Virus record (IMG/VR): IMGVR_UViG_3300032322_002561
Coordinates: 62,001 to 126,000 of that record
Reading direction: 5' to 3' (one strand)
Length of the DNA: 64,000 bases
Shown here: positions 9,960 through 47,920 of the stretch, in pieces
Layout: each line of letters begins with the position of its first letter
Position numbering within the stretch: position 1 is the first letter of the stretch
The notes under the pieces: generated by a model
The model's input: only the letters and a program-made list of their open reading frames with translations
The model's database searches: none
What the model was told of the DNA's origin: nothing
Program-made: the position numbers and the translations under genes

Positions 9960-10739
9960 TTATAAGGACCATTTATAGATATTATTAATGTCTAATGGAA
10001 CAGATTTAATAGATTCTGAGTTGTAAAGTCGCAAAATCATTCTTCTATGCTTCTGTGGATAGGTTCCGAGCATTTGATCTATTTCATCTGATACAAATTG
10101 CGGTATTGGAGTTGTTTGGGATACTATATCTTGATAATCTGGCCAAGATTCTCCTCGGATGGCCAAATAATCCTCATAGGTCAAATATTTAGGTTCAATT
10201 TTAACTTTTTGTCCATAACAATGAACCCAGTCGCATTCAAAACCAAATATTCTGGCAGAATTTATAATCCATGATAAATTTGGAGTTCCGTTGGGAATTA
10301 TTTTACAATTTCCGTTCCACCCATGTAATACATTGTCTGTGGTTTCAAAAGTCCAAAACATTTCTGGATTGGCGGTCTCTGGTCCAAATACAGTTTCAAA
10401 CAAAACATGTTCAATGTTTGGTTTTAGAATATAAGAAAAAAATCTAAAATGATCAAATAAGTGATACAACACTCCAAAGCAAGTTATAGTTTGACTTTTG
10501 TTAACCAACGGCGTTAATATATCAGGATTGGTTATGTCTCCAACAACAAAATCTACGTTTCCTGTAATTTTTTCTTTGGCTTGACTGATTAATTCGTCTC
10601 TAATCTCTACAGCATATACATGTTTGGCATTATTTTTTAAAATTAAATCGGTCGATTCGCCGGTATGACAGGCCAAATCTAATACAATTTTATTTTGTAA
10701 AATTTTATTATTAATTTTTAGATATTCTATTTTGTGCAT
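9960..10739 (-). CDS. Class I SAM-dependent methyltransferase
   Basis: VLDLACHTG, AVEIR, CFGVLYHL; AT-rich gene. Confidence 0.8.
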   Translation of the reverse strand: MHKIEYLKINNKILQNKIVLDLACHTGESTDLILKNNAKHVYAVEIRDELISQAKEKITGNVDFVVGDITNPDILTPLVNKSQTITCFGVLYHLFDHFRFFSYILKPNIEHVLFETVFGPETANPEMFWTFETTDNVLHGWNGNCKIIPNGTPNLSWIINSARIFGFECDWVHCYGQKVKIEPKYLTYEDYLAIRGESWPDYQDIVSQTTPIPQFVSDEIDQMLGTYPQKHRRMILRLYNSESIKSVPLDINNIYKWSL

Positions 10740-10745
10740 AATAAT

Positions 10746-10973
10746 TCACCTCCACCTCAATCTAAACATTACCGCATCTCGGTTATCCTCAAAACGAAAC
10801 GCAAAACCTTCAGTTGCCTGATATCCATGTAGGTGCCAACGACCGTGTCCAGGTGTGCTAGAACACCACTCAGTGATAGCGTTTGGATTCATATCCGCAT
10901 TGGCCAGCATGGTGTCCCAGGTCACAACCACTTCGGTCCAGTCGGGTGGTGGCCATGTTTCCAACCGATTCAT
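10746..10973 (-). CDS. Small hypothetical protein (paralog array)
   Basis: Ends FRFEDNRDAVMFRLRWR. Confidence 0.65.
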   Translation of the reverse strand: MNRLETWPPPDWTEVVVTWDTMLANADMNPNAITEWCSSTPGHGRWHLHGYQATEGFAFRFEDNRDAVMFRLRWR

Positions 10974-11203
10974 TCAAACTTCATCCTAAAAAAAGTCTCC
11001 TGTGCAGGATCCTTAAAAATAAATCTGGCTTCAGGGTGTGCATGCATGCTGTCATCATATCCATCATAGGGATCTGGTCGGTATTCCCAACTAAAATCTT
11101 CGTGCAACACAAGTCCATGTGCCAGGACCTGCTCTTTGAGATCTATGGCCTGCTGGGCATTTTTGACCAGGACTCGTATCATGCCCACCTCAACATGAAC
11201 CAA
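10970..11203 (-). CDS. Small hypothetical protein (paralog array)
   Basis: Ends FIFKDPAQETFFRMKFE. Confidence 0.6.
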   Translation of the reverse strand: MVHVEVGMIRVLVKNAQQAIDLKEQVLAHGLVLHEDFSWEYRPDPYDGYDDSMHAHPEARFIFKDPAQETFFRMKFE

Positions 11204-11406
11204 GTGTAATCTTCATCATGATCAAATATATAGCAAGTTTCTCCCAACTTGCTTTTGCTGACGTCCACCCTACACCTATAGGCTTTGCGCCAGCGAGCTC
11301 CATATTGTCTAGGACTTTCCATACGTTGTACCGGCAAAGCTCGAAAGGCTTTTAGATATGCTGGACCAAATGTTGGATCTGCTGTACTTACTCTAATCAT
11401 GACCAC
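11179..11406 (-). CDS. Small hypothetical protein (paralog array)
   Basis: Ends YIFDHDEDYTWFMLRWA. Confidence 0.6.
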   Translation of the reverse strand: MVMIRVSTADPTFGPAYLKAFRALPVQRMESPRQYGARWRKAYRCRVDVSKSKLGETCYIFDHDEDYTWFMLRWA

Positions 11407-11615
11407 CTCAATCGGAACAACACCGCATCCTGTTCTCTACGGAACATGTAGGTGCTCTTGTAGTCTGAGTAGATACCTTGTGCCATGATATCCTCGCCCA
11501 GTTTGTACCAATCCTGATCAAACTCGCCTATGTTGGTCTTGCACCAGTCGCACACTTCTACCCAGTCGTGGCTGGTATAGCAGATGTGTGGCCAATCCTC
11601 GTCAGGCAGTTGCAT
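11397..11615 (-). CDS. Small hypothetical protein (paralog array)
   Basis: Ends YMFRREQDAVLFRLRWS. Confidence 0.65.
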   Translation of the reverse strand: MQLPDEDWPHICYTSHDWVEVCDWCKTNIGEFDQDWYKLGEDIMAQGIYSDYKSTYMFRREQDAVLFRLRWS

Positions 11616-11952
11616 CCTGACTCCATTTCAGCTTGAAAAGACTCAAGGCTGTTTCGTTGACATAGATTCTGTATTCGTGATATCTACAGCTATAAGCCCA
11701 GTAGCGATTGATTTCACTAAAATCACCCAGGGAGTGATTCATACGCACCTTGCTCTTGATCATTTCTGCACGAGTTTCTATGTCCTGGCTCCATCCCCAG
11801 CTCTCGTTCATCCACTTACGCACACGATCAAAGTCCAAGACACCTGTGCCCAAGCCCCATTGCACATTCTTGCGAAACTCAATCATGTAGGGAAACTGCG
11901 TGTGGTAGGCGTAGCGTTTGTCTAACTTGGTAATGTGATAGTTCATATGCAC
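11602..11952 (-). CDS. Small hypothetical protein (paralog array)
   Basis: Ends IYVNETALSLFKLKWS. Confidence 0.65.
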   Translation of the reverse strand: MHMNYHITKLDKRYAYHTQFPYMIEFRKNVQWGLGTGVLDFDRVRKWMNESWGWSQDIETRAEMIKSKVRMNHSLGDFSEINRYWAYSCRYHEYRIYVNETALSLFKLKWSQDATA

Positions 11953-20082: not shown

Positions 20083-20158
20083 TGGTGCTGGAGAAAGGAA
20101 TCGAACCCTCGACATCCTGATTACAAATCAGGCGCTCTACCGTCTGAGCTACTCCAGC
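20083..20158 (-). tRNA. tRNA-Thr(UGU)
   Basis: Cloverleaf; CCTGA-TT-TGT-AA-TCAGG; encoded CCA. Confidence 0.95.
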
Positions 20159-20168
20159 ATAAAATTTA

Positions 20169-20381
20169 TTACACAGATGCTTCTTCTTTCACTTCTACTG
20201 CATGTTCTACATAGCCAGGTCTGCATTTTAATAAATCAATGCGACGTTGTATTTTGGCTTTTCGTTTGTTTTGTTGTGTTTTTTCTTTTAGATCAGTCAA
20301 CTGCTTGACGCTGAGACTGATGATTTTGACTTGACCCGACTTGGTATATCCTGGTTTACGACGATTGAGTTTTTTTGCCAT
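20169..20381 (-). CDS. Small basic hypothetical protein
   Basis: 70 aa, Lys/Arg-rich. Confidence 0.6.
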   Translation of the reverse strand: MAKKLNRRKPGYTKSGQVKIISLSVKQLTDLKEKTQQNKRKAKIQRRIDLLKCRPGYVEHAVEVKEEASV

Positions 20382-20398
20382 GATTGTGATCCTGTTTG

Positions 20399-21382
20399 TT
20401 AGATATGCTTACTTATAATTCTGTTCTCAAGGCCAACAAAGTTTAGTAACTGTTCAGCCCAGAGTTGATGTGATTTTTCAGTGGGATGACACGTGGCTTG
20501 ATTGTGATTGAGTGGGTTAGATTTCAACCAAGCCCAGCAAGCATCTGCACGTGTTACCTGATCAATCATGTATTCTCGATAATTGGAAAAGTAACCTTCG
20601 GGATCGTTGAGTCGATTAAAAGCTATACCACTAGCTGCGCCACTGATCAAAATTTGATCCAGTGTAATTGTCTTGTGGTCTTGATTGTTTTTTTCATTGT
20701 GATGGTAATTTATTTCAATCCAGGATTGTAAACTATCAAGCTCACTGTTGGTGGTGCTTGGTAAATCCACGGTAAAATTTCTTCCTACAATCAAGTCACA
20801 AGAAATATTCTCCCTCAGTTTGGCCAGCAGATCATACACAAACTGTTCTTCCTGTTCAAGATATTGCGTGACATCAGTTGGCACAGTTTTGCCCAATGCT
20901 TTATAGAAAGCACTGTTTCTACCGGTTTCTGTCAAGGTGGTGAACACAAATATGCGGTTATATCTAGAAAGATCAATGGGAGGTTTTATTGTGCAATGAC
21001 GAACAAGTTGTGACTCTATGTCTGTATCGGCATGTGCATCTGTGACCAGTTCGGGCCATCCAGGATCACGAATCAAATTGTAGTTTTCCTGAGTCAAAAA
21101 AGGAGTATGGTGTCCCAGTACATAGTTGTACAAGGCACACACAATGTCCAAATTGCCGCCACCGCATTTGCCCCAGTTAAACCAATCAGCATCAAGGTGA
21201 TCTGCAAGTCGCCTGCCATAACATTGTGCCAGCCTTGCATCATAGTCATCTATGTCTTTGTCATGGGCAATGGTACCAAGACTGTCACCAAATGTCCAGG
21301 AATCGCCCACTGATATTACAAGATTAGGACGATCCCGCACCAGTTGCAAGGTCAAATTCTGATGTCTAAACGACGGCATCAT
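20399..21382 (-). CDS. SGNH/GDSL hydrolase-like protein
   Basis: GDSWTFG, GGGN, CHPTEKSHQLWA. Confidence 0.7.
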   Translation of the reverse strand: MMPSFRHQNLTLQLVRDRPNLVISVGDSWTFGDSLGTIAHDKDIDDYDARLAQCYGRRLADHLDADWFNWGKCGGGNLDIVCALYNYVLGHHTPFLTQENYNLIRDPGWPELVTDAHADTDIESQLVRHCTIKPPIDLSRYNRIFVFTTLTETGRNSAFYKALGKTVPTDVTQYLEQEEQFVYDLLAKLRENISCDLIVGRNFTVDLPSTTNSELDSLQSWIEINYHHNEKNNQDHKTITLDQILISGAASGIAFNRLNDPEGYFSNYREYMIDQVTRADACWAWLKSNPLNHNQATCHPTEKSHQLWAEQLLNFVGLENRIISKHI

Positions 21383-21544
21383 TTAGTATTTGAGTCTGGC
21401 CTGTGTGTTAAAAGCTTTAGTAATGCGATGGGCAACACGTCTATGTTCCATGATCTGCCGTGTAGCATGCTCACGTTTTTCGCTTTTTGACCATTGACCG
21501 GCAATGGTACGACTTAATTCACCTGCTGATTGACGTTTTCCCAT
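21383..21544 (-). CDS. Small basic hypothetical protein (53 aa, not in ORF track)
   Basis: MGKRQSAGEL...ARLKY fills the gap between neighbours exactly. Confidence 0.55.
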   Translation of the reverse strand: MGKRQSAGELSRTIAGQWSKSEKREHATRQIMEHRRVAHRITKAFNTQARLKY

Positions 21545-21545
21545 G

Positions 21546-21770
21546 TTAGCGCACCTTGCTCAAGTAATCAACCATGCTGAACTGCCCGCTCTGTACTTCT
21601 TTGAGTGCGTCAATAGGAGTGACCCATGAGTTGGTTTCTCGGGCACGACGTTTCATTTCTCGCAAGCGTTGGCTGGCGGCTATGACCAAGTCATACCGTC
21701 CCGCACCACTCTTTTCAATACAGCGTTCAATATCAATTTCGCCACTGCGGCTTTCAATACGTGTGCTCAT
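21546..21770 (-). CDS. rpoZ: RNA polymerase omega subunit homolog
   Basis: IERCIEK..GRYDLVIAASQRLRE...ALKEV.SG pattern; GGAG RBS. Confidence 0.8.
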   Translation of the reverse strand: MSTRIESRSGEIDIERCIEKSGAGRYDLVIAASQRLREMKRRARETNSWVTPIDALKEVQSGQFSMVDYLSKVR

Positions 21771-21791
21771 GATTTCTCCAATTAAAAGTTT

Positions 21792-21820
21792 ATTATATAA
21801 CAATTTTTTTTGTTTGTCAA
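21792..21820 (-). promoter_or_regulatory. Consensus sigma70 promoter for rpoZ
   Basis: TTGACA-N17-TATAAT. Confidence 0.85.
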
Positions 21821-21898
21821 TGGTGCCCCGGGAAGGATTTGAACCTTCAACAGCTCCCTTCTGAGGAGAGTGCGTCTACCAGATTGCGCCACCGGGGT
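21821..21898 (-). tRNA. tRNA-Leu(CAG), short variable loop
   Basis: CTCTC-CT-CAG-AA-GGGAG; A73-CCA; A1:C72 mismatch. Confidence 0.88.
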
Positions 21899-21904
21899 CG
21901 TCCT

Positions 21905-22498
21905 TTACGTGGCTGTTTGTGTGGTACCATTTCCATTTTTAAAACCGATCACACCACCCTCGTCACGGATGCGTTTGAGCACATCTTCAAACAAGATAGG
22001 TGCGAAATCGGTTTGTTCCACACACACGCAATGATACCTGGTATCAATCACGTCGGTTTGTTTGCCATTGAAACCTGTGTGCATGACACGATTGGCATGC
22101 AGGTGTCCGTGGATGTTGACACCAAAACGTCCCAGACTTTCTGTGTGGATGGGAATATGGCTCAGGATCATTCCGTTCATGACATGATATGCACGCAGTT
22201 CACGGAAGTGCTCGCGATATTCTTCATCACGGAAGATGTCGTGGTTACCACGGATCAAGACCTTGTCACCGTTGAGCCTGCGCATGATGCCCAGAGCTTT
22301 CCTGTTGATCACAACATCGCCCAAGTGATAGACCTTGTCTGTGGGTCCGACACGCTCGTTCCAGGCTTTGACCATGAACTCATCCATTTCGTCGGGATCG
22401 TCCCAAGGTCTCAGCTTGGTCACACCATCGTTACGGGTAAAGCGACATACACCTGCGTGACCAAAGTGCGTGTCGCTGATTAAAAATACTGCTGGCAT
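21905..22498 (-). CDS. Calcineurin-like metallophosphoesterase
   Basis: SDTHFGH, HLGD, GNHD, LSHIP, HGHLH. Confidence 0.88.
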   Translation of the reverse strand: MPAVFLISDTHFGHAGVCRFTRNDGVTKLRPWDDPDEMDEFMVKAWNERVGPTDKVYHLGDVVINRKALGIMRRLNGDKVLIRGNHDIFRDEEYREHFRELRAYHVMNGMILSHIPIHTESLGRFGVNIHGHLHANRVMHTGFNGKQTDVIDTRYHCVCVEQTDFAPILFEDVLKRIRDEGGVIGFKNGNGTTQTAT

Positions 22499-22521
22499 AT
22501 TCGCCTCCTTTCTTATTTAAG

Positions 22522-22598
22522 TGGTACGGATGGAGGGACTCGAACCCTCAAAACTCGGATTTTAAGTCCGATACGTATACCTATTCCGTCACATCCGT
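22522..22598 (-). tRNA. tRNA-Leu(UAA), short variable loop
   Basis: TCGGA-CT-TAA-AA-TCCGA; encoded CCA. Confidence 0.92.
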
Positions 22599-22654
22599 AT
22601 CTAATTCTCGGATTCAACGCAGGCGGATTAGGCCAGACTTTATAGTGTGAATTG

Positions 22655-22728
22655 TGGAGCGGGATAAGGGAATCGAACCCTTGACCGAAGATTGGAAATC
22701 TGCTGTTTTGCCCCTAAACTAATCCCGC
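22655..22728 (-). tRNA. tRNA-Gly(UCC)
   Basis: GCG start, TT-TCC-AA loop, U73-CCA. Confidence 0.93.
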
Positions 22729-22732
22729 AAAA

Positions 22733-24944: not shown

Positions 24945-25020
24945 GCTGTGTTTCCTTTAGATACTTATAGACTAGATGTGGTTAGATCAAGGTTTTTTAT
25001 GATCTTGATACCAGACCAAC

Positions 25021-25099
25021 TGGTCGGAGTGGAAGGATTCGAACCTTCGGTCTCCTGCTCCCAAAGCAGGCGGATTAGACCAGACTTTCCTACACTCCG
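25021..25099 (-). tRNA. tRNA-Pro(UGG)
   Basis: CCTGC-TT-TGG-GA-GCAGG; encoded CCA. Confidence 0.93.
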
Positions 25100-25109
25100 A
25101 AAAATAAAA

Positions 25110-25505
25110 TTATTTGATGTTTTGCACAGTCTTGACCATGGTCTCCTCAGAGAGATGATCGTGCTTGAACTCTCTCACCGGGTGACCCAACAAGCCGGCA
25201 ATTGAGTTTTTAAAACTAATGCGTTTGTTGTTGTAGTCCCGTATGCGTATGGCTCTTCGACCAATCTCGTCCAAGGGCAACTGTTCTTCAACACCTGATT
25301 TCAATTGCCATTCTAACTCCCAAATGGCATTGTGTATGGCAGTCATGGCATCCACATTGTAGTTGAGTTCAGCACTTTGCGGAAGTTTTGCAAATTGCGC
25401 CTCATACCAGTCTAGTTCTATTTGGTTGGCACCATTGGTGCGTTGGTGTTTGACTCGTGCTATACAAAGCCGGTCGACTAATTCAAGAACCGGTAAAAAT
25501 TCCAT
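25110..25505 (-). CDS. Hypothetical helical protein
   Basis: 131 aa; AAAGGA RBS. Confidence 0.65.
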   Translation of the reverse strand: MEFLPVLELVDRLCIARVKHQRTNGANQIELDWYEAQFAKLPQSAELNYNVDAMTAIHNAIWELEWQLKSGVEEQLPLDEIGRRAIRIRDYNNKRISFKNSIAGLLGHPVREFKHDHLSEETMVKTVQNIK

Positions 25506-25548
25506 GTAGTTCCTTTCTGAAAATGATGAAATTACCTATCACTATCTA

Positions 25549-39333: not shown

Positions 39334-40182
39334 TTACTTGCCCCAGCCATTGCCCCACAAGTCCACATGCAACCTTGGACTGTACCAATAGCCGCGCTTG
39401 AGTGCTTCGTCGGCCACGTGAATTCTGTTGCCATCATACACGCTGACAACTCCGCCCACAGGCATCACAAAAACTGGACCTGCAAAGCCGCGCTCGCGAT
39501 ATGTTGCCACGGCACGATCCAATTCTTCAAAATCTTCCAGGCGTTCCACTACAAATTTCAAGTAGGTGACTCCGTGTAATTCATATTCCCACACGACATC
39601 GGGCTTGATAGCACTGTCCCATGTTTCACCTGACACACTCAACTTGGGGCTAACACTAAAAGTGATTTCACCAAACCAGTCGTCCAAGTAGTTGGCAAAT
39701 TCCCGGTGTAGTTCTTGAGTGCCATTGGTTTCAAATGTGATGTGTCTAAGTCCACGCTCGTGCAAGATGTCTAACAGCTCGGGATAGATTCGTTGCCAGC
39801 CCAACAGTGGTTCGCCGCCAGTGATCACAAGATGAACGGGATTTCCGTTCTTGAACTGCATCCACTGATTGTTGGGCAACAAACTGTGAATACGATCTGC
39901 CAATTCTGCAGCAGTGTATGTTGGACTTAGATGTTTAAAAGCCGGGTGCCATGACGCATAACTGTCGCAACCAGTGTCCACTAGTGGTAATTCTTCAAAC
40001 GTTTTGTAAAGATGCACTGACTTGGCAATTTCATCTGGCTCAGTAGTTTTCTCTCCAGGCTTACAACCAAATCCGGCACACTGAAAGTTGCAACCAAACA
40101 TGCGTAAGAAAATACTGGGCACGCCTACATAGCGACCTTCGCCTTGTGCTGAATAAAATATTTCACTGACTTTGAAATCCAT
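39334..40182 (-). CDS. queE: 7-carboxy-7-deazaguanine synthase (radical SAM)
   Basis: SEIFYSAQGEG..G.P..FLR.FGC, CDS, ITGGEP, ETNGT, SPKL, PRLH. Confidence 0.92.
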   Translation of the reverse strand: MDFKVSEIFYSAQGEGRYVGVPSIFLRMFGCNFQCAGFGCKPGEKTTEPDEIAKSVHLYKTFEELPLVDTGCDSYASWHPAFKHLSPTYTAAELADRIHSLLPNNQWMQFKNGNPVHLVITGGEPLLGWQRIYPELLDILHERGLRHITFETNGTQELHREFANYLDDWFGEITFSVSPKLSVSGETWDSAIKPDVVWEYELHGVTYLKFVVERLEDFEELDRAVATYRERGFAGPVFVMPVGGVVSVYDGNRIHVADEALKRGYWYSPRLHVDLWGNGWGK

Positions 40183-40190
40183 ACTTGTTC

Positions 40191-40919
40191 CTATAATCTT
40201 GTAACTGTACTTAGACCGCTTTGAGTCATTGTCAAATTCTTTGCCTCATTAGCAATTTTAACACGAAGTTTGCAATTTGTCATCCAACCTGGCAATACTG
40301 CATCCAAATACTGTAAATGTTCCAGCGGTGTTGGATGCGGATCTCCTTGATTGCGCCAACCTTGTGCAAATACCGTGCTTCTAAAACTGGGTAGCATGAT
40401 GTCTAAAGCATCTCGATAAACATTCAAGACATCTTGATCTGGTGTCTCTGTGTCATCAAATTGATGTACATTGCCAAGATCACACACGCTTAAAAACCGC
40501 CAAGTTGCACCAGTTTGTTCTAGCACTGTTTTGGCGGCTTGAATCATGGCCAAGTCTCTTATGAGCGAACCACGTTCGGTCACAGCCGCCCGCACATAGT
40601 CCTTGTTGTATATGGGACAGGATGTGATATTGCCCAAAGTCTGCCAACGATCGGTGTAGCGATCCTCACGCATGACATTGGTCCAACATACCAACACAGT
40701 ATCTGACTCGCCCAAACTATGACGTTGGTTGGCTTCAATCAGGCTGTTAAAGATAAAGTGATTGCCAGCACCACTTTGAGCCCAATTTTGGTAATGTGCA
40801 AATTGTGTGCCCAAAAGGTCAGCCCAAGTGGGCCAACGATAATTTGTAAAACTACATCCAAAAGTAAAAAGTCTTGAGCCTTTTACCTCCACCACTCCTC
40901 CCAGGGAAACACAATCCAC
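40191..40919 (-). CDS. SGNH-like protein
   Basis: FGCSFT..WPTW, GAGN, DPHPT; start uncertain. Confidence 0.6.
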   Translation of the reverse strand: MDCVSLGGVVEVKGSRLFTFGCSFTNYRWPTWADLLGTQFAHYQNWAQSGAGNHFIFNSLIEANQRHSLGESDTVLVCWTNVMREDRYTDRWQTLGNITSCPIYNKDYVRAAVTERGSLIRDLAMIQAAKTVLEQTGATWRFLSVCDLGNVHQFDDTETPDQDVLNVYRDALDIMLPSFRSTVFAQGWRNQGDPHPTPLEHLQYLDAVLPGWMTNCKLRVKIANEAKNLTMTQSGLSTVTRL

Positions 40920-41419
40920 ACATCCTTGTCTGCTTTGTTTATGGCCACAGCTGAATATGTGACATCCAGTTTGCTCTTGCTTGACTCATTGTCATACAAG
41001 CATGCCACACGCACATTGTTGCCCCAGACTTCTTTCCAACGTTTGTCTTTGGGGAAACAACCGCTTTGCCAATCTTCTTTGATCCAGTTTAGTGTGGCGC
41101 CCGAATCGTTGATGTCATCTACAATCAAGATATTTTTACGTCCGTCTCCGCTGGCTTGCGGATCAAACTCTCTGTGACCATAGGCATCTTCAGCCATCCA
41201 TAAGTTGCTTTCTTGTTCAGCGCCATCTCGCAAGCTGACCTTGAGTGTTTCCATTCTGCAACCCAAGTACTGACTGATCAAGTTGGCCGGCACTAGACCG
41301 CCACGTGTTATACCAACCACATAGTCAGGCTGCCACTGGTCCCGGTGCAATTGTCTTAGAAGCTCTTGCACTTGCTTCTCCACGTCTTGCCACGTCAATG
41401 TTATTCGTTGTGTTGCCAT
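40883..41419 (-). CDS. Type I phosphoribosyltransferase (Gpt-like)
   Basis: VGITRGG, ILIVDDINDSGAT, WIVFPWE. Confidence 0.9.
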   Translation of the reverse strand: MATQRITLTWQDVEKQVQELLRQLHRDQWQPDYVVGITRGGLVPANLISQYLGCRMETLKVSLRDGAEQESNLWMAEDAYGHREFDPQASGDGRKNILIVDDINDSGATLNWIKEDWQSGCFPKDKRWKEVWGNNVRVACLYDNESSKSKLDVTYSAVAINKADKDVWIVFPWEEWWR

Positions 41420-43334
41420 GTGTTTCTACCGTTGCCTTTCCAAAATTTCTACGCCGTGCAAAATAAAACATTTCTAAAAAAGTAGGAAAACTCATGTTTT
41501 TGTCTTCGGGAAAATCTAGATTATACACTGTAGGCGATTCTTCCAAAGGCTGACCAAAAGTCAAGTAATCCCAGATATTGTAATCCAATTCCAAGGATTG
41601 TGGATATTGATCAATGTCTGGATATGCAATAAAATACTTGCGCTGAAACTTCATGACACTGTCCAACAGTTCCTTGGGCAAGTTATATTGTAACATAAAT
41701 CTGTATAAAAGGTCAAACACCTGATCGTATCTTGATTCTTCGTGCAGTTTTAATATGGTTCGGTGCATGAGGTTCCAACCATAAATTTCAATGCCCCCAA
41801 TGTCAGGATGGTCAATTTTGTCACTGCTCATCCAGTTTTGATTGTATTGTCTAGTATCCAGCATTTCTTTATGGAACCAGGAATCCTGCTGTATGAATTC
41901 AAATAAATCTTCATAGAATTGTGAGTAGTCAATATCCAGATATTGATAAACAAATCTGCTCAACAAAGTGCTCAGCCCATTGATATGAAAAGTGTTTATG
42001 AACCAAGAATACACTTGAGCATCCAGCATGGATTCATGTGGCATGTCCTTGGTGCCAGTGATGATTTCGATGCTTTCAATAATTTGTTCGTTTTTGTATG
42101 ATCCACTGAAGTAGTCAGTGACTCTGTTGCCAGTAATCTTAAAAAGTTTTCTTTGCAATAGATTCATTTCGGCATTTTCCAACAGTTGGGCCTGAAACAC
42201 CGTGAGTCCTGTGTGATTACCCATGCGGAACAATTTCCAAAAATTATCTTTCCAGGTCTGTAAACTTTCACCAGGCAAGCCAAGTATGAGTTCGGTATAG
42301 GTGGGAATGTTGCGCTGTTCACACAGTTCAAACACTTCTTCCAACTTGTTCATTTCCATGTTTTTACGACGAATGTTTTCCAGAACATCCACGTCCAAAC
42401 TCTGTACACTGAGTGTGAGACCCTGATTGAAGCCTGGTGCATTCAGTAGCTTGGTTATGATATCAACCACTTCACGTTTTTGATTCTTGGCCCAGGCCAC
42501 CGAGAAGGTCTTGGGAAATCCATAGCGTTCTTGTATTTCTATGATTTTATCTGCAATGAGATTGTCTCTGTCGGGGAACATGCCAAAGTTAGCATCGGTG
42601 ATTGAAATAAAACCCACACGGTGCTGTGCCATCCACTCAAGTTCCTCAAATACTCGATCCAAGCGATAGTGTTTGACCTTGTTGTAGGTCAAGCTGCCCC
42701 AGTCACAGAATGTGCAAGCAAATGGACATCCACGATTGGTTTCCAAGGTACCGTTCCACTCCACGTCGGGATTTTCTGCAATGATTTTGTCAAACACTCC
42801 GGTAAGATAGGGACTGGGTATGTCTTCAAGATTTTCTATGCGTTTGGCATCGCCTGTATTGATGGGTTCACCGTTGCGATTGATCAAGAGTCCTGGAATA
42901 TCGTCCCAGCAACGCTTTTCAAAGGCCTGTATTACTCGTTGAAAAGTTATTTCGCCCTCAAAACAAATAATCATGTCCATGTAGGGCTCTTTGCGAAAGA
43001 TATCAGGATCTGTGATGGCCGGCTCTGGCCCACCAAAAATTATCACACAGTCGGGATTGGCTGCTTTGACTGCACGAGCCACGGTGTAGTTGTACTGGTG
43101 ATTCCACACATAGGTACTAAAAGCCACCACATCGTTTTGAGCCAAGCGAGCCACCACATCATCTATGGCTTCACGCCGCCAAATCATGTCGGTGCACTCA
43201 AAATTTTCTCGAATCCATGGATCAGTGAGGGCATAGCTCCAAATCACTCCTGCGCTATAGGGCAAGTAGTGTGCATTCAGCTCTTTGGGTCCTTGTTGAA
43301 AATTGGGTTGTACCCAGGCAATCTTATAGGTCAT
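41325..43334 (-). CDS. B12-binding radical SAM protein
   Basis: LPYS, FGGP, ETNRGCPFACTFCDWG, ILGLPGE. Confidence 0.88.
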   Translation of the reverse strand: MTYKIAWVQPNFQQGPKELNAHYLPYSAGVIWSYALTDPWIRENFECTDMIWRREAIDDVVARLAQNDVVAFSTYVWNHQYNYTVARAVKAANPDCVIIFGGPEPAITDPDIFRKEPYMDMIICFEGEITFQRVIQAFEKRCWDDIPGLLINRNGEPINTGDAKRIENLEDIPSPYLTGVFDKIIAENPDVEWNGTLETNRGCPFACTFCDWGSLTYNKVKHYRLDRVFEELEWMAQHRVGFISITDANFGMFPDRDNLIADKIIEIQERYGFPKTFSVAWAKNQKREVVDIITKLLNAPGFNQGLTLSVQSLDVDVLENIRRKNMEMNKLEEVFELCEQRNIPTYTELILGLPGESLQTWKDNFWKLFRMGNHTGLTVFQAQLLENAEMNLLQRKLFKITGNRVTDYFSGSYKNEQIIESIEIITGTKDMPHESMLDAQVYSWFINTFHINGLSTLLSRFVYQYLDIDYSQFYEDLFEFIQQDSWFHKEMLDTRQYNQNWMSSDKIDHPDIGGIEIYGWNLMHRTILKLHEESRYDQVFDLLYRFMLQYNLPKELLDSVMKFQRKYFIAYPDIDQYPQSLELDYNIWDYLTFGQPLEESPTVYNLDFPEDKNMSFPTFLEMFYFARRRNFGKATVETHGNTTNNIDVARRGEASARASKTIAPGPVAA

Positions 43335-44197
43335 GCCTTATTTACTTGACTTAATTTTTGTTGTTTTTCAAAGTGAGTGTGTGGATTAGCAAACTGCACC
43401 ATTTGTTTGTTGACATCGTTTTGTGCAAGTTTTTCCCAGGGATCTTGTTTGTGCAAGAACACATTTTCAAAAAAAGTCATGTCCTGATTTCGCGTATTTT
43501 TCAAATAGGTAGCTATTTTGGCAGCATCCCTATGACGCAGTTCGATCATGGGTGCGCTGTGAAAGTCGTCTGGATCACTGGGTTTGCCCTCTAGCATGGC
43601 ACGACGTTTGAATGTTTCGTCACCGTTGTTGCCGGTCAAATCAAAGCGATCATGTTCAACCCACACCGGTATTCTCTGCCAGATATCCAACAAATAGGCC
43701 TGTTGACTCAACCAACCATCCTGCGTGGGGTGCGGGCTGATATACCCCAAGAGATCATACCATTCGCGTGGAACTATGGGGAATATACTGTAGGGATGAT
43801 CATTGTGAGTGTGGAAAGCCAAGAGCTTGAACTGACCGGTATAGCGAATGATTTCTGTGTCCCAGCCCTGAGTCTGCATGATGGCATCATCATTCCAGAT
43901 CACAATCCAATCACTGTCGGTCTTGGCTGCTAGTTTGTTGTTGTACACATTGAGTCTAATATAGCCCAAGGGATCAAACAACATGGCGGTGTAAACGGCC
44001 TTGACTGAATCAAGATAGGGTTTAATTGTGTCCGTGAAATATTTTTGTCCAATGGCATCATCACGGTCCAAGGCTATCATGATCTGCACACGATTGTAGT
44101 CGTCGGCGAGATCTATTAAACTTTGCAGACTGCGCATCAAGGCATCAGTTCGACCACGTGTGGGTAACAATATGGAAAGAGCATATTTGTGATTCAT
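43331..44197 (-). CDS. GT2/GT-A glycosyltransferase
   Basis: SILLPTRGR, WNDD. Confidence 0.75.
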   Translation of the reverse strand: MNHKYALSILLPTRGRTDALMRSLQSLIDLADDYNRVQIMIALDRDDAIGQKYFTDTIKPYLDSVKAVYTAMLFDPLGYIRLNVYNNKLAAKTDSDWIVIWNDDAIMQTQGWDTEIIRYTGQFKLLAFHTHNDHPYSIFPIVPREWYDLLGYISPHPTQDGWLSQQAYLLDIWQRIPVWVEHDRFDLTGNNGDETFKRRAMLEGKPSDPDDFHSAPMIELRHRDAAKIATYLKNTRNQDMTFFENVFLHKQDPWEKLAQNDVNKQMVQFANPHTHFEKQQKLSQVNKA

Positions 44198-44200
44198 TGA

Positions 44201-44791
44201 CTATCCTTCGTATATGGCACTGTTACCGGCATGCTCAAATACTTCTGCTGAACGTAATTTAACGCCTGATCCTACTGGATAGCGAGCCTTGTGTATGTTG
44301 CCGTTGGGGCAATGATAGTTGTTGCCTGTTTTAAAAATATGCAGTATGGTGGCCATTTCCTTATAGGCAAGTTCAGCAAACTTTTCGCAACCCACACCTT
44401 CCACGATCCTTAAATCACACACACCGCCTTGATCTTGCAATCCCAACTGGGCCATTTGTTTAAACATACCTTTGTGAGGATCATCATGTGCTACCACGAG
44501 AGTATGATCAAACATGTATTCGCTCCACTCTTTAAAGGCCTTGAGTCCACCAAAGTCCATGACCCAGTTGCGGTCATCCAGGGTTTCGCTTTCAAATACG
44601 AGTTTGATACCAATTGAGTATCCGTGTAGTAATGAGCAGTGACTATGTGTGCTACGCCATTGACGGAAGCAACAACTCAATCCGCGATCGTTGCCATATG
44701 TTTTTGTTGAAACGTATTTGGCTTTGGTCGTGCTTTCATTGAGCTGTCTTGTTGTTTCTTTTCCAATCTGTTCTTCTGTGTAATGAATCAT
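44201..44791 (-). CDS. queD: 6-carboxytetrahydropterin synthase
   Basis: HCSLLHGYS, WVMDFG, FDH, EKFA, VFE. Confidence 0.9.
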   Translation of the reverse strand: MIHYTEEQIGKETTRQLNESTTKAKYVSTKTYGNDRGLSCCFRQWRSTHSHCSLLHGYSIGIKLVFESETLDDRNWVMDFGGLKAFKEWSEYMFDHTLVVAHDDPHKGMFKQMAQLGLQDQGGVCDLRIVEGVGCEKFAELAYKEMATILHIFKTGNNYHCPNGNIHKARYPVGSGVKLRSAEVFEHAGNSAIYEG

Positions 44792-44797
44792 GCTGGT

Positions 44798-44864
44798 TCT
44801 CCTATGTTAATTTTAGCATAGGCTTGCAGAATTTGTAAAGCGGGATGAATGCCGGAAGACCGCT
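44798..44864 (-). promoter_or_regulatory. Structured 5' leader of queD (riboswitch-like candidate)
   Basis: AGCGG/CCGCT stem, then CCTATG/CATAGG hairpin overlapping the AGGAG RBS. Confidence 0.5.
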
Positions 44865-44871
44865 AAGATTA

Positions 44872-45240
44872 TTATTTAACTCGATAATTGCCACGCTCGG
44901 GAATAACATGGCGAACACCACCACGTGGATCTTCCATGTCACCTTTTCTGCGAGGAATGAGATGCACGTGCGGATACATAACTGTTTGCCCGGCAGCCTC
45001 TCCCCAGTTGATACCAATATTGAAACCATTCCACTCGCCAGAGTTGACTTGTGCCTGGCCCCATTTTAGTGCGTCAGCAAAACAATCTTCAATCACACCG
45101 TTGGCTGTGTACTTGGGCACAAACAACAAATGGCCTTCAGTAACTGGGTAACGATCACGATATACCACGACGTGGAAATCTTCACGTACTACATCATTCC
45201 AAGGTGCTATACCTAATCGTTGTGCTTCCTCAAGATCCAT
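44872..45240 (-). CDS. HIT-family nucleotide hydrolase
   Basis: GHLLFVPK, GFNIG..AAGQTV..PHVHLIPR. Confidence 0.9.
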   Translation of the reverse strand: MDLEEAQRLGIAPWNDVVREDFHVVVYRDRYPVTEGHLLFVPKYTANGVIEDCFADALKWGQAQVNSGEWNGFNIGINWGEAAGQTVMYPHVHLIPRRKGDMEDPRGGVRHVIPERGNYRVK

Positions 45241-45242
45241 GT

Positions 45243-45428
45243 TTATTTTGTTTTTTTTGTTACTACTTCAAGATCTAATCCCACAGCCAAGAGCCAGGAA
45301 TTAATGCGTTCGGCCACAACATCTTCGTGTATGGGATTATCCCACTGCATGTCTATGCGCACAGCAAGATCACCGGTTTCGACATGCAGATTTTGATATT
45401 GCAAATAGTAACTGACCTTGTTGCTCAT
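45243..45428 (-). CDS. Hypothetical protein
   Basis: 61 aa coupled ORF. Confidence 0.55.
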   Translation of the reverse strand: MSNKVSYYLQYQNLHVETGDLAVRIDMQWDNPIHEDVVAERINSWLLAVGLDLEVVTKKTK

Positions 45429-46264
45429 CTTGGTGCAAACTCCTGTTGCAGTTTGATATTGTCCATGAACTCTTTTTTAACACTTGAATCTGTGCTGAAC
45501 ACACCTCGTAACACTGTGGTTTGTGTCAGACTTGAGTGTGCCATGATACCACGATTTTCGCAACAACCGTGAGTGGCCTGGATATACACACCTACGTTGA
45601 CACTGTCTGTGGCTTTCATGATTTCTCGTGCGATGTCATTACATAGTTCTTCCTGAAGTGTACCACGACGAGCACACCATTGAGCAATACGAGTATACTT
45701 AGAAAGACCAATAAGTTTATTGGCAGCAATGATTCCGATATAAGCGACGCCGTTAACAGGCTGGTGATGGTGACTACACATACTACGCAACTCACTGCGT
45801 ACAACCAACATTCCTTCATATCTATCCTCCGAATCGTTAGGGAAAGCAGTAGCATCTGGTGCCGGCTCATAGCGTCCTGCCATGATTTCATTGAAATACA
45901 TCTTGGCCAAGCGACGTGCTGTACCTTGGCTGTTGGGATCTGTTTCGCGATCGATCAACAAAGTGTCTAGCACCTTTTCAAATGCTTCTGTGGCTTCATC
46001 GATTAATTTTTGTTTTTTGTTTTCATCTTCGATAAATTCACTGATGTTGTCTCCAGCCCAAAAGCGTTTGCCCGTGGCTCGCATGTTTTCACGAATCACT
46101 TGGCTCAGTGGGCGTCCTTCATCTAGATCAATCACGGCATCTTCATAACCAGGATGATATGGTGCCTCTGCCACAATACGGCTTTGTTGTAAGACATCGA
46201 ATGTTTTTTGGCTGGCATTATTTTTCACTGCGTTCTCTCTATCGTCACTGGTAAATGTTGTCAT
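45425..46264 (-). CDS. folE: GTP cyclohydrolase I
   Basis: SMCSHH, GLSKYTR, LQE, HGC..RG. Confidence 0.95.
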   Translation of the reverse strand: MTTFTSDDRENAVKNNASQKTFDVLQQSRIVAEAPYHPGYEDAVIDLDEGRPLSQVIRENMRATGKRFWAGDNISEFIEDENKKQKLIDEATEAFEKVLDTLLIDRETDPNSQGTARRLAKMYFNEIMAGRYEPAPDATAFPNDSEDRYEGMLVVRSELRSMCSHHHQPVNGVAYIGIIAANKLIGLSKYTRIAQWCARRGTLQEELCNDIAREIMKATDSVNVGVYIQATHGCCENRGIMAHSSLTQTTVLRGVFSTDSSVKKEFMDNIKLQQEFAPR

Positions 46265-46289
46265 AAGTTCCCTTTATTATACAAGATAT

Positions 46290-46877
46290 TTAGATTTTTG
46301 CAAGATCAAATGGAATTTTCCTCAAGTCTGGATAAATTCCTGGTTGCGCTTTGGGCTCAATGCTTGGTAACAGTTCCAATCCCTTGGCACACAATTCCAA
46401 AGTAGGGCAATAATGCCATCCTAAAATTAATTCTGTTTCTTTCTCCCAGGGAATGTGCAGGTCTCGACCATCTGCACGTTGTCGACTGAACAATTGGTAG
46501 GCGTCTGGATCATCTAATAGTATAGCACCCACTTTGCCTAATTGTAAAGGTTTGGTCCAACCAAAACTCAAGCATTGAAACTGTCCAGGTCTGTACATGC
46601 CCGGTTCTAATCTTCTAGCACTATCCCAGATCCTTGTGTTTGCAAATTGATATTCACCTGTCCAGGGTTGGTCAGATAGAGTAAACTTTATACCCAAGTG
46701 GTACATGAGCATGGGCACACTGAGATAGGTATAGGCCGTGAACCTGGTTTGTTGCACAGCATCGTATCTCATGCAAAGTTCCAAAGCATGAGTACAGCCA
46801 TCTGTGACCACCACATAGGGTGCGCCGGTGTATTTGGCCAAGGCACTTTCAAAATCAAACAAGGCCTGAAAACTCAT
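46290..46877 (-). CDS. Short DegT-like PLP-dependent enzyme
   Basis: DGCTHALEL, WDSA, LSFGWTKPL..GKVGAIL. Confidence 0.75.
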   Translation of the reverse strand: MSFQALFDFESALAKYTGAPYVVVTDGCTHALELCMRYDAVQQTRFTAYTYLSVPMLMYHLGIKFTLSDQPWTGEYQFANTRIWDSARRLEPGMYRPGQFQCLSFGWTKPLQLGKVGAILLDDPDAYQLFSRQRADGRDLHIPWEKETELILGWHYCPTLELCAKGLELLPSIEPKAQPGIYPDLRKIPFDLAKI

Positions 46878-47920
46878 GACATTCTACCTAGATCAACTGT
46901 GCCAAAAAATACATTGCTTAGGGCACGATTTGTATAACTGGCCATGTGTGCAGTTACACCGTGACGATGCAAGGCCGTAAGCACAGTGTCGTTTTCAACA
47001 TCCACAATGATATTTTTACTGTCAATAGACAACAGTCCAACTGGCATGCTGGGCCACAAATTAGACCAAGCTGGGTCTAAGAAATCAATTGCACGTTTGT
47101 ATTCGCTGTTGATGTCAGCAAAGGCATCTGGTACATCAGTGACCGTGACTATTTCCCAGTCTGGAAAAAATTTACCAAGATTTAGGTCTGGTTCGAAACA
47201 TAAAACCAGGCCTGGACAGGGTATCGCAAAAGATTTTTTCCAACGGCCTGAAGTTGTTATCACATGATTCTCACTGTCTGTAAAAATACTATCTATTTGC
47301 TGTTGTGCCCAGACCGCGTTTGATTCCTGTGCTTCAAAGTATCTGTGCGCACCTGCACATGTCACGCTAGACAACAACGTCATGGTGGCTTGATCAACTT
47401 CATGTACAGTGACATAATTTTCAAGTTCTGGCAGAACTTCGTTAAAGCACCCCCACTGACTGGTAAAGTCTTCCATGTGCTTTTGCAGACCATGTATTTT
47501 TTTACATTCTTCCTTGATGGCATCAGGTAAACCTTCAAAGTTTTTGTAATCATTGCAAGCGGGCCATGAAACGTCGGCAACATTTTTGTAAAATTCAGCA
47601 AAGTCAAATTCAATCAAGGGACAATAAAAGGCTTTGTCCGCTATAACAATCAAATTGTTTCTGGGACTATAACTGGCGGCCACATATTTTTTTTGCCACT
47701 GCGGTAGTACCGGATATCTTGTGCGAAATATCTCAACCTCGTGCAACCAAAGTTTGCCCAAGAGCCAGTTGGCATTTTGTTCAATTTCATTGGTGATCAA
47801 TTCAACACTGTTGCGTAATTCTATATCTGTAATATCAACAAAAAGTTCTGGCAGATATGATGTCCCTATCAGACAGGCCTTGAGTGGATCCCAGTCTTGA
47901 TATTTGGAAAATTTTATCAT
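46874..47920 (-). CDS. Divergent amidinotransferase-fold protein
   Basis: WDPLKACLIG, SPRN, terminal TVDL.R; catalytic Cys/His not evident. Confidence 0.55.
   Translation of the reverse strand: MIKFSKYQDWDPLKACLIGTSYLPELFVDITDIELRNSVELITNEIEQNANWLLGKLWLHEVEIFRTRYPVLPQWQKKYVAASYSPRNNLIVIADKAFYCPLIEFDFAEFYKNVADVSWPACNDYKNFEGLPDAIKEECKKIHGLQKHMEDFTSQWGCFNEVLPELENYVTVHEVDQATMTLLSSVTCAGAHRYFEAQESNAVWAQQQIDSIFTDSENHVITTSGRWKKSFAIPCPGLVLCFEPDLNLGKFFPDWEIVTVTDVPDAFADINSEYKRAIDFLDPAWSNLWPSMPVGLLSIDSKNIIVDVENDTVLTALHRHGVTAHMASYTNRALSNVFFGTVDLGRMS

What the first reader, a model, noticed from the sequence alone, without database searches (positions are those of the whole stretch)
10085..47595. A short Y-x2-[IV]-x-[DG]-x-[SG]-W-P module is shared by three unrelated enzymes
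Seen: YLAIRGESWPDY...IPQFVSDEI in a methyltransferase (about 10085-10180), YNLIRDPGWPE in an SGNH protein (about 21050-21085), and YKNVADVSWPAC...LPDAIKEEC in an amidinotransferase-fold protein (about 47505-47595). Inference: a mobile peptide module of about 35 aa that targets modification enzymes to a common scaffold, carrier or virion substrate.
Basis: partly seen in the sequence, partly recalled or inferred. Interest (0 to 1): 0.6.

Follow-up and report, generated by a model that had tools for sequence, protein, structure and literature searches.

The report
Shuffled three-helix mini-domain in phage enzymes
The short Y…WP motif marks a real, uncatalogued 42-residue acidic three-helix domain that uncultured aquatic phages have shuffled into at least five unrelated enzyme families; what it binds is still unknown.

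Summary
The strict motif occurs exactly three times in the 236-kb phage genome, all in real genes: a class-I methyltransferase, an SGNH-like protein and a pentein/amidinotransferase-fold protein. It is not chance. A profile built only from homologues of the SGNH protein finds the methyltransferase at E=8.7e-8. A profile built from modules of other proteins finds the third protein at E=1.2e-12. In the methyltransferase and SGNH families the roughly 42-residue segment is cleanly present or absent among homologues. A profile search of 1.84 billion proteins found 77 hits. These include twitch/SPASM radical-SAM enzymes, other methyltransferases, GDSL hydrolases and a GT10-like family, with the module N-terminal, internal, C-terminal or tandem. 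It is predicted to fold alone into three helices and is strongly acidic (mean net charge −4.9). It matches no Pfam, NCBIfam, PHROG or PDB family and is almost confined to viral contigs. "Mobile module" is therefore supported. "Targets enzymes to a common scaffold" is plausible from the insertion sites and the glycan/tailoring gene context, but it is untested. I rate it a new small accessory domain family of moderate to high interest.

The parts
9960..10739 (-). Class-I SAM-dependent methyltransferase gene (259 aa), host protein 1
   Evidence: Pfam Methyltransf_25/11/23; 93 metagenomic homologues; AlphaFold model pLDDT 94 with a Rossmann methyltransferase fold that matches PDB methyltransferases
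10056..10187 (-). Module copy 1 (residues 185-228, YLTYEDYLAIRGESWPDY...DEIDQMLGTYP), inserted between the penultimate and last beta-strands of the methyltransferase
   Evidence: Translation; three helices at 188-194, 202-207 and 214-224 in the model; cleanly absent from homologues P0084-P0094; 65 bits with the A1 profile
20399..21382 (-). SGNH/GDSL-like protein gene (327 aa), host protein 2
   Evidence: Invariant GDSWT.G, N, N and H-P blocks in a 51-sequence alignment; the most distant homologue is named lysophospholipase L1-like esterase; Pfam gives only a sub-threshold DUF6071 hit
20969..21100 (-). Module copy 2 (residues 95-138 of the 327-aa ORF, FLTQENYNLIRDPGWPEL...QLVRHC...), inserted after the block-II helix
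   Evidence: Translation; present in 36 and absent from 20 homologues; 39 bits, E=2.6e-10
46874..47920 (-). Pentein (amidinotransferase/ADI/DDAH-like) fold protein gene (348 aa), host protein 3
   Evidence: No Pfam or PHROG hit; ESM Atlas structure search gives TM 0.68 to an 'inosamine-phosphate amidinotransferase' cluster (PF02274 in 92%) and 0.67 to a DDAH/ADI cluster
47477..47608 (-). Module copy 3 (residues 105-148, FDFAEFYKNVADVSWPAC...LPDAIKEECKKIHG), the two-cysteine 'type B' subtype
   Evidence: Translation; E=1.2e-12 with an HMM built from modules of other proteins only; 55% identical to the module of a GDSL protein, P0207

Best explanation
The motif is the signature of a discrete domain of about 42 residues that is predicted to fold on its own. 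Its layout is helix 1 (h-T-x-E-E-Y-x-x-h), a G/D-x-x-W-P turn, a short helix 2 (x-Y/C-x-x-h-h), a loop, and helix 3 (h-P-x-h-h-x-x-E-I/L/C-x-x-h-L). It is strongly acidic. It is found almost only in uncultured, mostly aquatic and often jumbo, phage genomes. It has been shuffled as a cassette into loops or termini of at least five unrelated enzyme families: class-I methyltransferases, SGNH/GDSL proteins, pentein-fold proteins, twitch/SPASM radical-SAM enzymes and an expanded GT10-like family. These points are shown here. The following is inferred. The domain sits where these folds usually place acceptor-substrate-binding elements, and its hosts are all tailoring enzymes encoded among sugar/glycan and base-modification genes. 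It therefore most likely acts as an accessory recognition or docking domain that brings different tailoring enzymes to a shared macromolecular acceptor or partner protein. The logic resembles that of the RiPP recognition element or of carbohydrate-binding modules. Most of the conserved residues look like helix caps and hydrophobic core, so any specificity would lie in the variable, acidic surface.
For: Homology across families is shown by cross-family HMM hits. The profile search of 1.84e9 proteins found 77 proteins at E<=1e-3, of which 66 were new and one was a low-complexity false positive.

Cassette behaviour is shown by clean presence or absence in the methyltransferase family and the SGNH family. 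On a tree built without the module columns, the SGNH family needs 4 state changes, at least 2 of them forced by supported branches, including a module-less sequence nested in a 98% clade.

The architectures are varied:
- N-terminal module plus twitch/SPASM plus radical SAM (NF033640, Pfam).
- Radical SAM followed by one or two modules.
- Methyltransferases with the module N-terminal, at about residue 50, or near the C-terminus.
- GDSL proteins with the module at about residue 95 or about 150.
- The GT10-like family with the module before or after the catalytic half.
- Tandem copies, and a complete 158-aa two-module ORF.

Cross-family module identity reaches 55-67%. The isolated 42-aa segment is modelled at pLDDT 83 with the same three helices as in the full methyltransferase model at pLDDT 94. 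Mean net charge is -4.9 per module, against -0.56 per 42 aa in the rest of the host proteins, and the median pI is 4.2.

The module is virus-restricted. A back-translated pattern gave at least 9 true modules in 10 IMG/VR hits, but only 1 true module in 14 hits across 596 Gb of prokaryote genomes. Several copies occur per jumbo-phage genome: 3 here, 4 in G002 and 2 in G001.

The context is tailoring chemistry. Neighbours are recurrently radical-SAM enzymes and GT10-like paralogues. The window encodes three B12-type radical-SAM enzymes (one without a detected B12 domain), an NAD epimerase/dehydratase, DegT-like and class-III aminotransferases, a GT1-like protein, FolE and a QueD-like protein.
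Against: No binding partner or ligand was identified. The three copies in this genome are only 22-24% identical to each other and belong to different subtypes. Each is closer to modules in other genomes, which fits poorly with one shared partner surface within a genome. The conservation pattern (T-x-x-E cap, Y7, W15-P16, hydrophobic positions, E34) can be explained by fold stability alone. I could not inspect model coordinates, so proximity to active sites is inferred from known fold topologies, not measured. The three module-bearing genes are scattered at 10, 21 and 47 kb and are not in one operon. The GT10-like assignment of the fifth family is only a lead (Atlas score 0.84; no Pfam or PDB sequence hit).
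Confidence: 0.45

Rival explanations
1. The module is a real shuffled domain with no shared ligand. It would be a tolerated or mildly beneficial surface decoration, for example a stabilising or solubilising acidic mini-domain, or a lid whose role differs in each enzyme.
For: The conserved positions are those expected for helix caps and the core of a three-helix unit. The module has been lost repeatedly within the SGNH family without loss of the enzyme. The three copies in one genome are divergent subtypes. The module is strongly acidic, as solubility-enhancing tags are.
Against: The module is as well conserved as the catalytic core across 83 methyltransferase homologues down to 45% identity. 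It has been acquired repeatedly and independently by tailoring enzymes, at different positions and sometimes in tandem. A complete two-module ORF exists with no recognisable enzyme domain. All of this suggests selection for a portable function.
Confidence: 0.27
2. Modules bind one another, homo- or heterotypically, and so assemble the different tailoring enzymes into a multi-enzyme complex.
For: Several different module-bearing enzymes occur per genome. Tandem pairs occur within single proteins. Small three-helix domains are frequent protein-protein adaptors (general knowledge).
Against: All modules are strongly acidic, which disfavours self-association without counter-ions. There is no positive evidence.
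Confidence: 0.08
3. The module is a nucleic-acid-binding helix-turn-helix or SAP-like unit that tethers the enzymes to phage DNA or RNA for hypermodification.
For: The best, though insignificant, structural alignments are to Xre/Cro-type HTH domains (Z 2.2-3.0). The window carries FolE and QueD-like genes typical of 7-deazaguanine pathways next to host gene 3.
Against: Net charge averages -4.9 and median pI is 4.2, the opposite of DNA-binding HTH or SAP domains. A Z of 3.0 or less is far below the tool's stated noise level for helical models. No HTH or SAP Pfam family was hit consistently across the 57 segments.
Confidence: 0.05
4. The segments are footprints of a selfish DNA element that inserts in frame into genes, like Rickettsia palindromic elements, and the peptide itself has no function.
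For: A 40-50-aa in-frame segment is present or absent among orthologues of unrelated proteins, as with RPEs (general knowledge).
Against: The three DNA copies share little beyond the TGGCC of the Trp-Pro codons. The DNA has no hairpin potential (z = -0.22, 0.01 and 0.86). Conservation is at the amino-acid level, with an invariant Trp and a predicted autonomous fold. Terminal fusions and tandem copies exist.
Confidence: 0.03
5. The similarity is a chance coincidence of a short, post-hoc motif.
For: The regex was derived from the same three sequences it describes.
Against: Shuffles give 0.007 expected matches against 3 observed. Independent profiles recover the other copies. The profile search found 77 significant hits in 1.84e9 proteins.
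Confidence: 0.01

Closest known systems
RiPP recognition element (RRE, PqqD-like domain). Comparison from general knowledge.
   Same: A small portable domain fused at various positions to radical-SAM/SPASM enzymes, methyltransferases and other tailoring enzymes. Its role is to bring chemically different enzymes to one shared substrate. This is the functional logic proposed here.
   Different: The RRE is an 85-90-aa winged helix-turn-helix with a three-stranded sheet, and it is bacterial. The module here is 42 aa, all-helical, virus-restricted, and shows no sequence match. No precursor peptide is known.
Rickettsia palindromic elements (in-frame selfish DNA inserts). Comparison from general knowledge.
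   Same: Segments of 30-50 aa present or absent in many unrelated proteins of one genome, tolerated in surface loops.
   Different: RPEs are recognisable as palindromic DNA repeats. Here there is no nucleotide similarity or hairpin, while amino-acid conservation and a predicted autonomous fold are strong.
Roughly 40-residue three-helix adaptor domains (UBA/CUE, E2 peripheral-subunit-binding domain, the Cpl-7/CW_7 cell-wall-binding repeat of phage lysins). Comparison from general knowledge.
   Same: Similar size and three-helix architecture, promiscuous occurrence including tandem repeats, and usually ligand- or protein-docking roles.
   Different: No detectable sequence or significant structural similarity. 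Foldseek found nothing and the best VIA-align Z was 3.0, to generic HTH arrangements. The W-P turn and strong acidity are distinctive.
NCBIfam NF033640, twitch domain-containing radical SAM protein (N_Twi_rSAM)
   Same: The commonest host of the module. P0158 matches the family above its cut-off (197 bits against 170).
   Different: The family model starts to align only at residue 80 of P0158, at profile position 50. The module at residues 6-46 therefore lies outside the known family definition.

Membership tests
Any curated protein family or domain (Pfam-A, NCBIfam, PHROGs) for the module itself | A significant profile match covering the 42-aa segment | tested here: not met
   The 57 module segments scanned one by one against Pfam at E<=10 gave no family hit by more than 2 members, with best E 0.0088. 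Full-length hosts hit only their catalytic domains in Pfam, NCBIfam and PHROGs.
Helix-turn-helix (Xre/Cro-like) DNA-binding domains | Structural match clearly above background | tested here: not met
   Best Z is 3.0 (rmsd 2.5 Å over 39-40 residues). The tool states that Z under about 13 for helical models may reflect only a common arrangement. Foldseek found no hit with E<=0.001.
Helix-turn-helix (Xre/Cro-like) DNA-binding domains | Basic, DNA-contacting surface | tested here: not met
   Mean net charge is -4.9 and median pI is 4.2 over 186 instances.
RiPP recognition element (PqqD-like wHTH) | A domain of about 85-90 aa with three helices plus a three-stranded beta-sheet | tested here: not met
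   The model of the module has three helices only in 42 aa. No PqqD family appeared in the Pfam scans.
RPE-like in-frame selfish DNA | Nucleotide-level repeat with palindromic or hairpin structure | tested here: not met
   Alignment of the three DNA copies shows only scattered identities around TGGCC. DNA folding z-scores are -0.22, 0.01 and 0.86.
Class-I SAM-dependent methyltransferase (host 1) | Rossmann-like methyltransferase fold with a SAM-binding motif | tested here: met
   Pfam Methyltransf_25 at 37 bits (cut-off 27) and Methyltransf_11 at 29 bits (cut-off 21). Invariant DLxCxxG in the family. The model matches PDB methyltransferases at E about 1e-10.
SGNH/GDSL hydrolase superfamily (host 2) | Conserved blocks with catalytic Ser (GDS), Gly, Asn and His | tested here: inconclusive
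   Invariant G25-D26-S27, N68/N76 and nearly invariant H298-P299 are present, but no Pfam SGNH model reaches threshold. A related module-bearing group hits Lipase_GDSL only weakly.
Pentein / guanidino-group-modifying enzyme superfamily (host 3) | Pentein fold | tested here: inconclusive
   The ESM Atlas model (pLDDT 0.72) aligns at TM 0.67-0.68 to clusters carrying PF02274 ADI. There is no sequence-profile hit.
Pentein / guanidino-group-modifying enzyme superfamily (host 3) | Catalytic Cys-His-Asp/Glu triad | not tested
   No alignment to characterised members was available. The only sequence relative found is an unannotated marine virus ORF at 21.6% identity.

The most novel reading that the evidence does not exclude
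The module is a virus-specific 'address' domain. Jumbo aquatic phages would use it to recruit a whole suite of chemically different tailoring enzymes (glycosyltransferase-like, methyltransferase, SGNH, amidinotransferase-like, radical SAM) to one macromolecular acceptor, such as a virion glycoprotein/glycan or another phage-made polymer. That would be an RRE-like recruitment system for a so far unknown phage modification pathway.
Probability: 0.25. Interest if true: 0.8.

Novelty: new variant of a known kind. Interest (0 to 1): 0.6.

Why it matters
Small portable recognition domains are how many biosynthetic systems bring different enzymes to one substrate. Finding such a domain gives a direct handle on the substrate. 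This domain is undescribed, virus-restricted and attached to at least five enzyme superfamilies in uncultured jumbo phages that also carry large, unexplained sets of radical-SAM and glycosyltransferase-like genes. A pull-down or structure of a 42-residue peptide could therefore reveal what these phages are modifying: virion, DNA or host surface. The profile (alignment A1) also offers a practical marker for annotating many 'hypothetical' phage proteins as tailoring enzymes of one functional guild. If the module turns out to be only a structural decoration, it remains a clean natural example of a minimal autonomous three-helix fold inserted into loops of several folds.

Tried and rejected
I used full-length family alignments and a back-translated DNA pattern instead.
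- tblastn of the three host proteins against 50,697 GenBank phage records gave no hit for two of them and one weak hit for the third.
- tblastn of type A and type B module segments against the same records gave no hit.
- Five cultured jumbo phages with the closest DNA polymerases (Phosso, Atu_ph07, Vibrio 2.275.O, CBB, 121Q) lack the module.
- Foldseek against the PDB with the isolated module found nothing. VIA-align wide gave only Z<=3.0.
- Complex prediction with the methyltransferase module and the module of the 348-aa protein returned 'no answer' (score 0.01, controls not run). This is neither evidence for nor against binding.
- A loose fourth copy in a radical-SAM ORF upstream of the window (genome 51158-52375, YQMLRAGSWP) is not significant with any profile.
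- A literature search for motif strings found nothing relevant. A paper on aquatic jumbo 'moraphages' (PMC12619734) reports core glycosyltransferases and predicted Bacteroidota hosts but does not mention this module. I did not test whether this genome belongs to that lineage.
- A PDB sequence search with the GT10-like family profile found nothing.
- P0152 and probably several other 54-130-aa 'stand-alone' hits are contig-end fragments. Only P0161 was verified as a complete small ORF.
- Read laying was not used. No alternative genetic code was needed.


Full report
**Observation**

The window is bases 62,001-126,000 of a single 236,309-bp viral contig (45% GC, CheckV completeness 68%). It occurs nowhere else in the genome. 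All three matches lie on the minus strand inside long ORFs:
- nt 10140-10169 in ORF 9960-10739 (259 aa)
- nt 21053-21082 in ORF 20399-21382 (327 aa)
- nt 47561-47590 in ORF 46874-47920 (348 aa)

Shuffling residues within the 429 ORFs of at least 100 aa gives 0.007 matches per genome on average. That test is weak, because the regex was written after seeing the three sequences, so I relied on independent profiles instead.

**The three host proteins**

The three hosts are unrelated.
- ORF 1 matches class-I SAM methyltransferase models above Pfam thresholds. Its AlphaFold model (pLDDT 94) matches PDB methyltransferases.
- ORF 2 has no Pfam hit above threshold. Its 56-member family keeps the invariant GDSWT.G, Asn and His-Pro blocks typical of SGNH/GDSL proteins.
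- ORF 3 has no sequence-family hit. Its ESM Atlas model aligns at TM 0.67-0.68 with viral clusters carrying the ADI/amidinotransferase family PF02274.

**Is the similarity real?**

The word search found 93 homologues of the methyltransferase. Of these, 82 carry a conserved segment of about 42 residues (consensus h-T-x-E-E-Y-x-x-h-A-G-P-D-W-P-x-Y-x-x-I-I-S-x-x-x-I-P-x-F-V-x-x-E-h-x-Q-h-L), and the 11 most distant ones lack exactly that segment.

The SGNH-like protein has 55 homologues. Counting the query, 36 sequences carry the segment at the same loop and 20 lack it. On a maximum-likelihood tree built without the module columns, the carriers fall in one supported clade (96%) that also holds five module-less sequences. 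One of these is nested in a 98% clade. The minimum is four changes of state, at least two of them forced by supported branches. The segment is therefore a separable cassette that can be lost without losing the enzyme.

Cross-family profile searches gave the following:
- A profile built only from the SGNH family's segments finds the methyltransferase ORF at E=8.7e-8 among all 1817 six-frame ORFs of the genome, with the 348-aa protein next at E=0.11.
- A profile built only from the methyltransferase family's segments ranks the other two proteins as its best non-self hits (0.018, 0.03).
- A profile built from 71 modules found later in other proteins hits the 348-aa protein at E=1.2e-12. This protein has no detectable homologues of its own, so the test is independent.

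Chance is excluded.

**How widespread is it?**

Alignment A1 (57 segments, 43 profile positions) against 1.84 billion representative proteins gave 77 hits at E<=0.001. Of these, 66 were new and one was a low-complexity false positive.

After masking the module, the new proteins fall into many unrelated clusters. The architectures found were:
- Module plus twitch/SPASM plus radical SAM, about 400 aa. P0158 exceeds the NF033640 cut-off, but the family model starts aligning only after the module.
- Radical SAM followed by one or two modules.
- Methyltransferases with the module N-terminal, at about residue 50, or near the C-terminus.
- GDSL proteins with the module at about residue 150.
- Many proteins with no family hit.

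A fifth host family emerged from neighbourhood analysis. It is a virus-only group of 310-380-aa proteins with 10 paralogues in this genome. The module lies before the conserved catalytic half in P0153, P0184 and P0198, and after it in P0208 and P0215. Its S.V.ET...F.TEK..KPI motif and the nearest named Atlas clusters (GT10 fucosyltransferase, score 0.84) make a GT10-like glycosyltransferase a lead and no more.

Other observations on distribution:
- Tandem copies occur in P0152, P0153, P0161, P0170, P0174 and P0198.
- P0161 is a complete 158-aa ORF with two modules.
- P0152 is a contig-end fragment, so other short hits may be fragments too.
- Modules in unrelated hosts reach 55-67% identity. 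Examples are an MTS-type methyltransferase against a radical-SAM enzyme at 67%, and the window's 348-aa protein against a GDSL protein at 55%. This indicates relatively recent shuffling between families.

**Two subtypes**

- Type A has A-G-x-D-W-P-x-Y ... E-[IL].
- Type B has [KA]-D-x-S-W-P-x-C ... L-P-x-x-I-x-x-E-C-x-x-h-H.

Cys at profile positions 18 and 35 co-occur 10 times, against 1.1 expected from the column frequencies. This suggests that the two positions touch (Tyr/Ile against Cys/Cys). The association is confounded by shared ancestry, and I could not measure distances. The window's methyltransferase copy is type-A-like. The SGNH copy is intermediate, with a trailing H-C. The 348-aa protein's copy is type B.

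**Structure and chemistry**

In the full methyltransferase model the segment forms three helices (188-194, 202-207, 214-224) between strand 167-175 and the last strand 233-240. The isolated 42 residues, modelled with A1, give the same three helices at pLDDT 83. This predicts an autonomous fold.

Foldseek found nothing in the PDB. The exhaustive aligner's best Z was 3.0, to generic HTH-type three-helix arrangements, which is well inside the noise stated for helical models. No Pfam family is hit consistently.

Over 186 instances the module carries a mean net charge of -4.9 and a median pI of 4.2. The rest of the host proteins average -0.56 per 42 residues. This argues against a DNA-binding HTH or SAP role.

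Trp15 is invariant, Tyr7 is 97% conserved, Pro16 96% and Glu34 89%. The T-x-x-E start, the Asp/Ser before Trp-Pro and the Pro at the start of helix 3 look like helix caps. That reading is an inference from general helix-capping rules.

**Not selfish DNA**

The three DNA copies share little beyond TGGCC and show no hairpin potential. A Rickettsia-palindromic-element-like origin is not supported.

**Distribution**

A back-translated pattern for Y-x2-[IV]-A-G-x-D-W-P-x-Y found 10 sites in IMG/VR. At least 9 of these are full modules, in proteins of 217-486 aa. It found 14 sites in 596 Gb of prokaryote genomes, about the number expected by chance on my own estimate. Only one of those is a true module: a methyltransferase-family gene on a 183-kb contig of a Haliscomenobacter MAG, which could be a phage contig.

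No GenBank phage record matched. The five cultured jumbo phages with the closest DNA polymerases (42-50% identity) lack the module. Other large viral contigs carry 0-4 copies. Sequencing runs holding small shares of this DNA are labelled lake-water and wastewater metagenomes, which gives only a tentative habitat.

**Context**

The three genes are scattered in the window. The window is rich in tailoring chemistry:
- three large radical-SAM enzymes, two of them with detected B12-binding domains, and a smaller radical-SAM enzyme
- an NAD epimerase/dehydratase
- DegT-like and class-III aminotransferases
- a GT1-like protein
- GTP cyclohydrolase I and a QueD-like PTPS
- two of the GT10-like paralogues

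In other viral contigs the module-bearing genes sit among radical-SAM genes and GT10-like paralogues.

**Interpretation**

Shown:
- The motif marks a real, portable domain of about 42 residues.
- Three helices and an autonomous fold are predicted.
- The domain is acidic and virus-restricted.
- It is not in current family libraries.
- It has been shuffled among at least five enzyme families.

Inferred: a shared accessory role in acceptor recognition or docking. The inference rests on where the module sits. In the methyltransferase it lies between the last two strands. In the SGNH fold it follows the block-II helix. In radical-SAM enzymes it precedes the twitch domain. In the GT-like proteins it lies in or beside the non-donor half. 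By general knowledge of these folds, these are regions that usually shape acceptor binding. The inference also rests on the fact that only tailoring enzymes carry the module.

Against a single shared partner, the three copies in this genome are only 22-24% identical and belong to different subtypes, and the conserved residues can be explained by fold stability alone. A complex prediction for two of the modules gave no verdict and counts neither way.

**Comparison with known systems**

The proposed function works like an RRE or a carbohydrate-binding module, that is, a portable recognition unit on diverse tailoring enzymes. In size and architecture the module resembles UBA, PSBD and Cpl-7-type three-helix mini-domains. 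It meets none of the tested membership criteria of RRE, HTH or RPE, and matches no curated family. I rate it a new variant of a known kind: an undescribed promiscuous accessory domain.

Noticed in passing
window 30361-31491 (+) and 32123-33088 (+); eight more copies elsewhere in the genome (G000 5886-6419, 42225-43175, 45011-46099, 47428-48582, 57396-58595, 58573-59679, 126782-127897, 219995-221254): A virus-only family of about 310-380 aa is expanded to 10 paralogues in this genome. It also lies next to SGNH homologues in most related IMG/VR loci. It has no Pfam or PDB sequence hit. A conserved ET...F.TEK..KPI motif and the nearest named Atlas clusters (GT10 fucosyltransferase, 0.84) make a glycosyltransferase a lead. 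Some members elsewhere carry the module.
   Followed up: partly
window 9042-11952, minus strand: Eight small ORFs (72-116 aa) lie in an array that flanks the methyltransferase gene on both sides. Most end in a similar F-x-L-[RK]-[WF] C-terminal motif, which suggests that they are paralogous. Function unknown.
   Followed up: no
window 20083-29481, minus strand: A cluster of 11 tRNA genes plus an ARAGORN-predicted tmRNA (28377-28819, flagged tmRNA*, tag ANAANDEVFALAA). The SGNH-like gene sits inside this cluster. tRNA-Thr (20083-20158) is 93% identical to one in Sinorhizobium phage Phosso.
   Followed up: no
window 39334-51943, minus strand: A run of modification genes surrounds host gene 3: a 282-aa radical-SAM enzyme, two B12-binding radical-SAM enzymes (41325-43334, 47917-49752), a QueD-like PTPS (44201-44791), GTP cyclohydrolase I (45425-46264), a short 195-aa DegT-like ORF, an NAD epimerase/dehydratase and a GT1-like protein. 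FolE with QueD hints at a 7-deazaguanine or pterin branch. No QueC or DpdA was looked for.
   Followed up: partly
G000 51158-52375 (+), about 10 kb upstream of the window: A 406-aa radical-SAM ORF contains YQMLRAGSWPRD, which fits a loosened motif but is not significant with any module profile. It may be a degenerate copy or chance.
   Followed up: partly
L088 4334-5107 (contig NZ_JBBAKG010000001.1, Haliscomenobacter sp. MAG, 183 kb): This is the only true module found in 596 Gb of prokaryote genomes. It is a close relative of the window's methyltransferase. It could be a phage contig binned into a Bacteroidota MAG, or a host clue. A recent paper predicts Bacteroidota hosts for a lineage of aquatic jumbo phages (PMC12619734), but I did not test whether this genome belongs to that lineage.
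   Followed up: no
L117 (MH319727.1, Marine virus AG-345-D19), residues aligned to 105-148 of the 348-aa protein: The only sequence relative of host protein 3 (21.6% identity) has NNIEGIYWGMLDDW...PERLHDEEVMC at the module position. This looks like a degenerate module with W-G instead of W-P, but it scores nothing with the profile.
   Followed up: partly
window 57243-59903 (-): A T4-type family-B DNA polymerase, 42-50% identical to those of the jumbo phages Phosso, Atu_ph07, Vibrio 2.275.O, CBB and 121Q. This places the genome among jumbo T4-superfamily myoviruses.
   Followed up: partly
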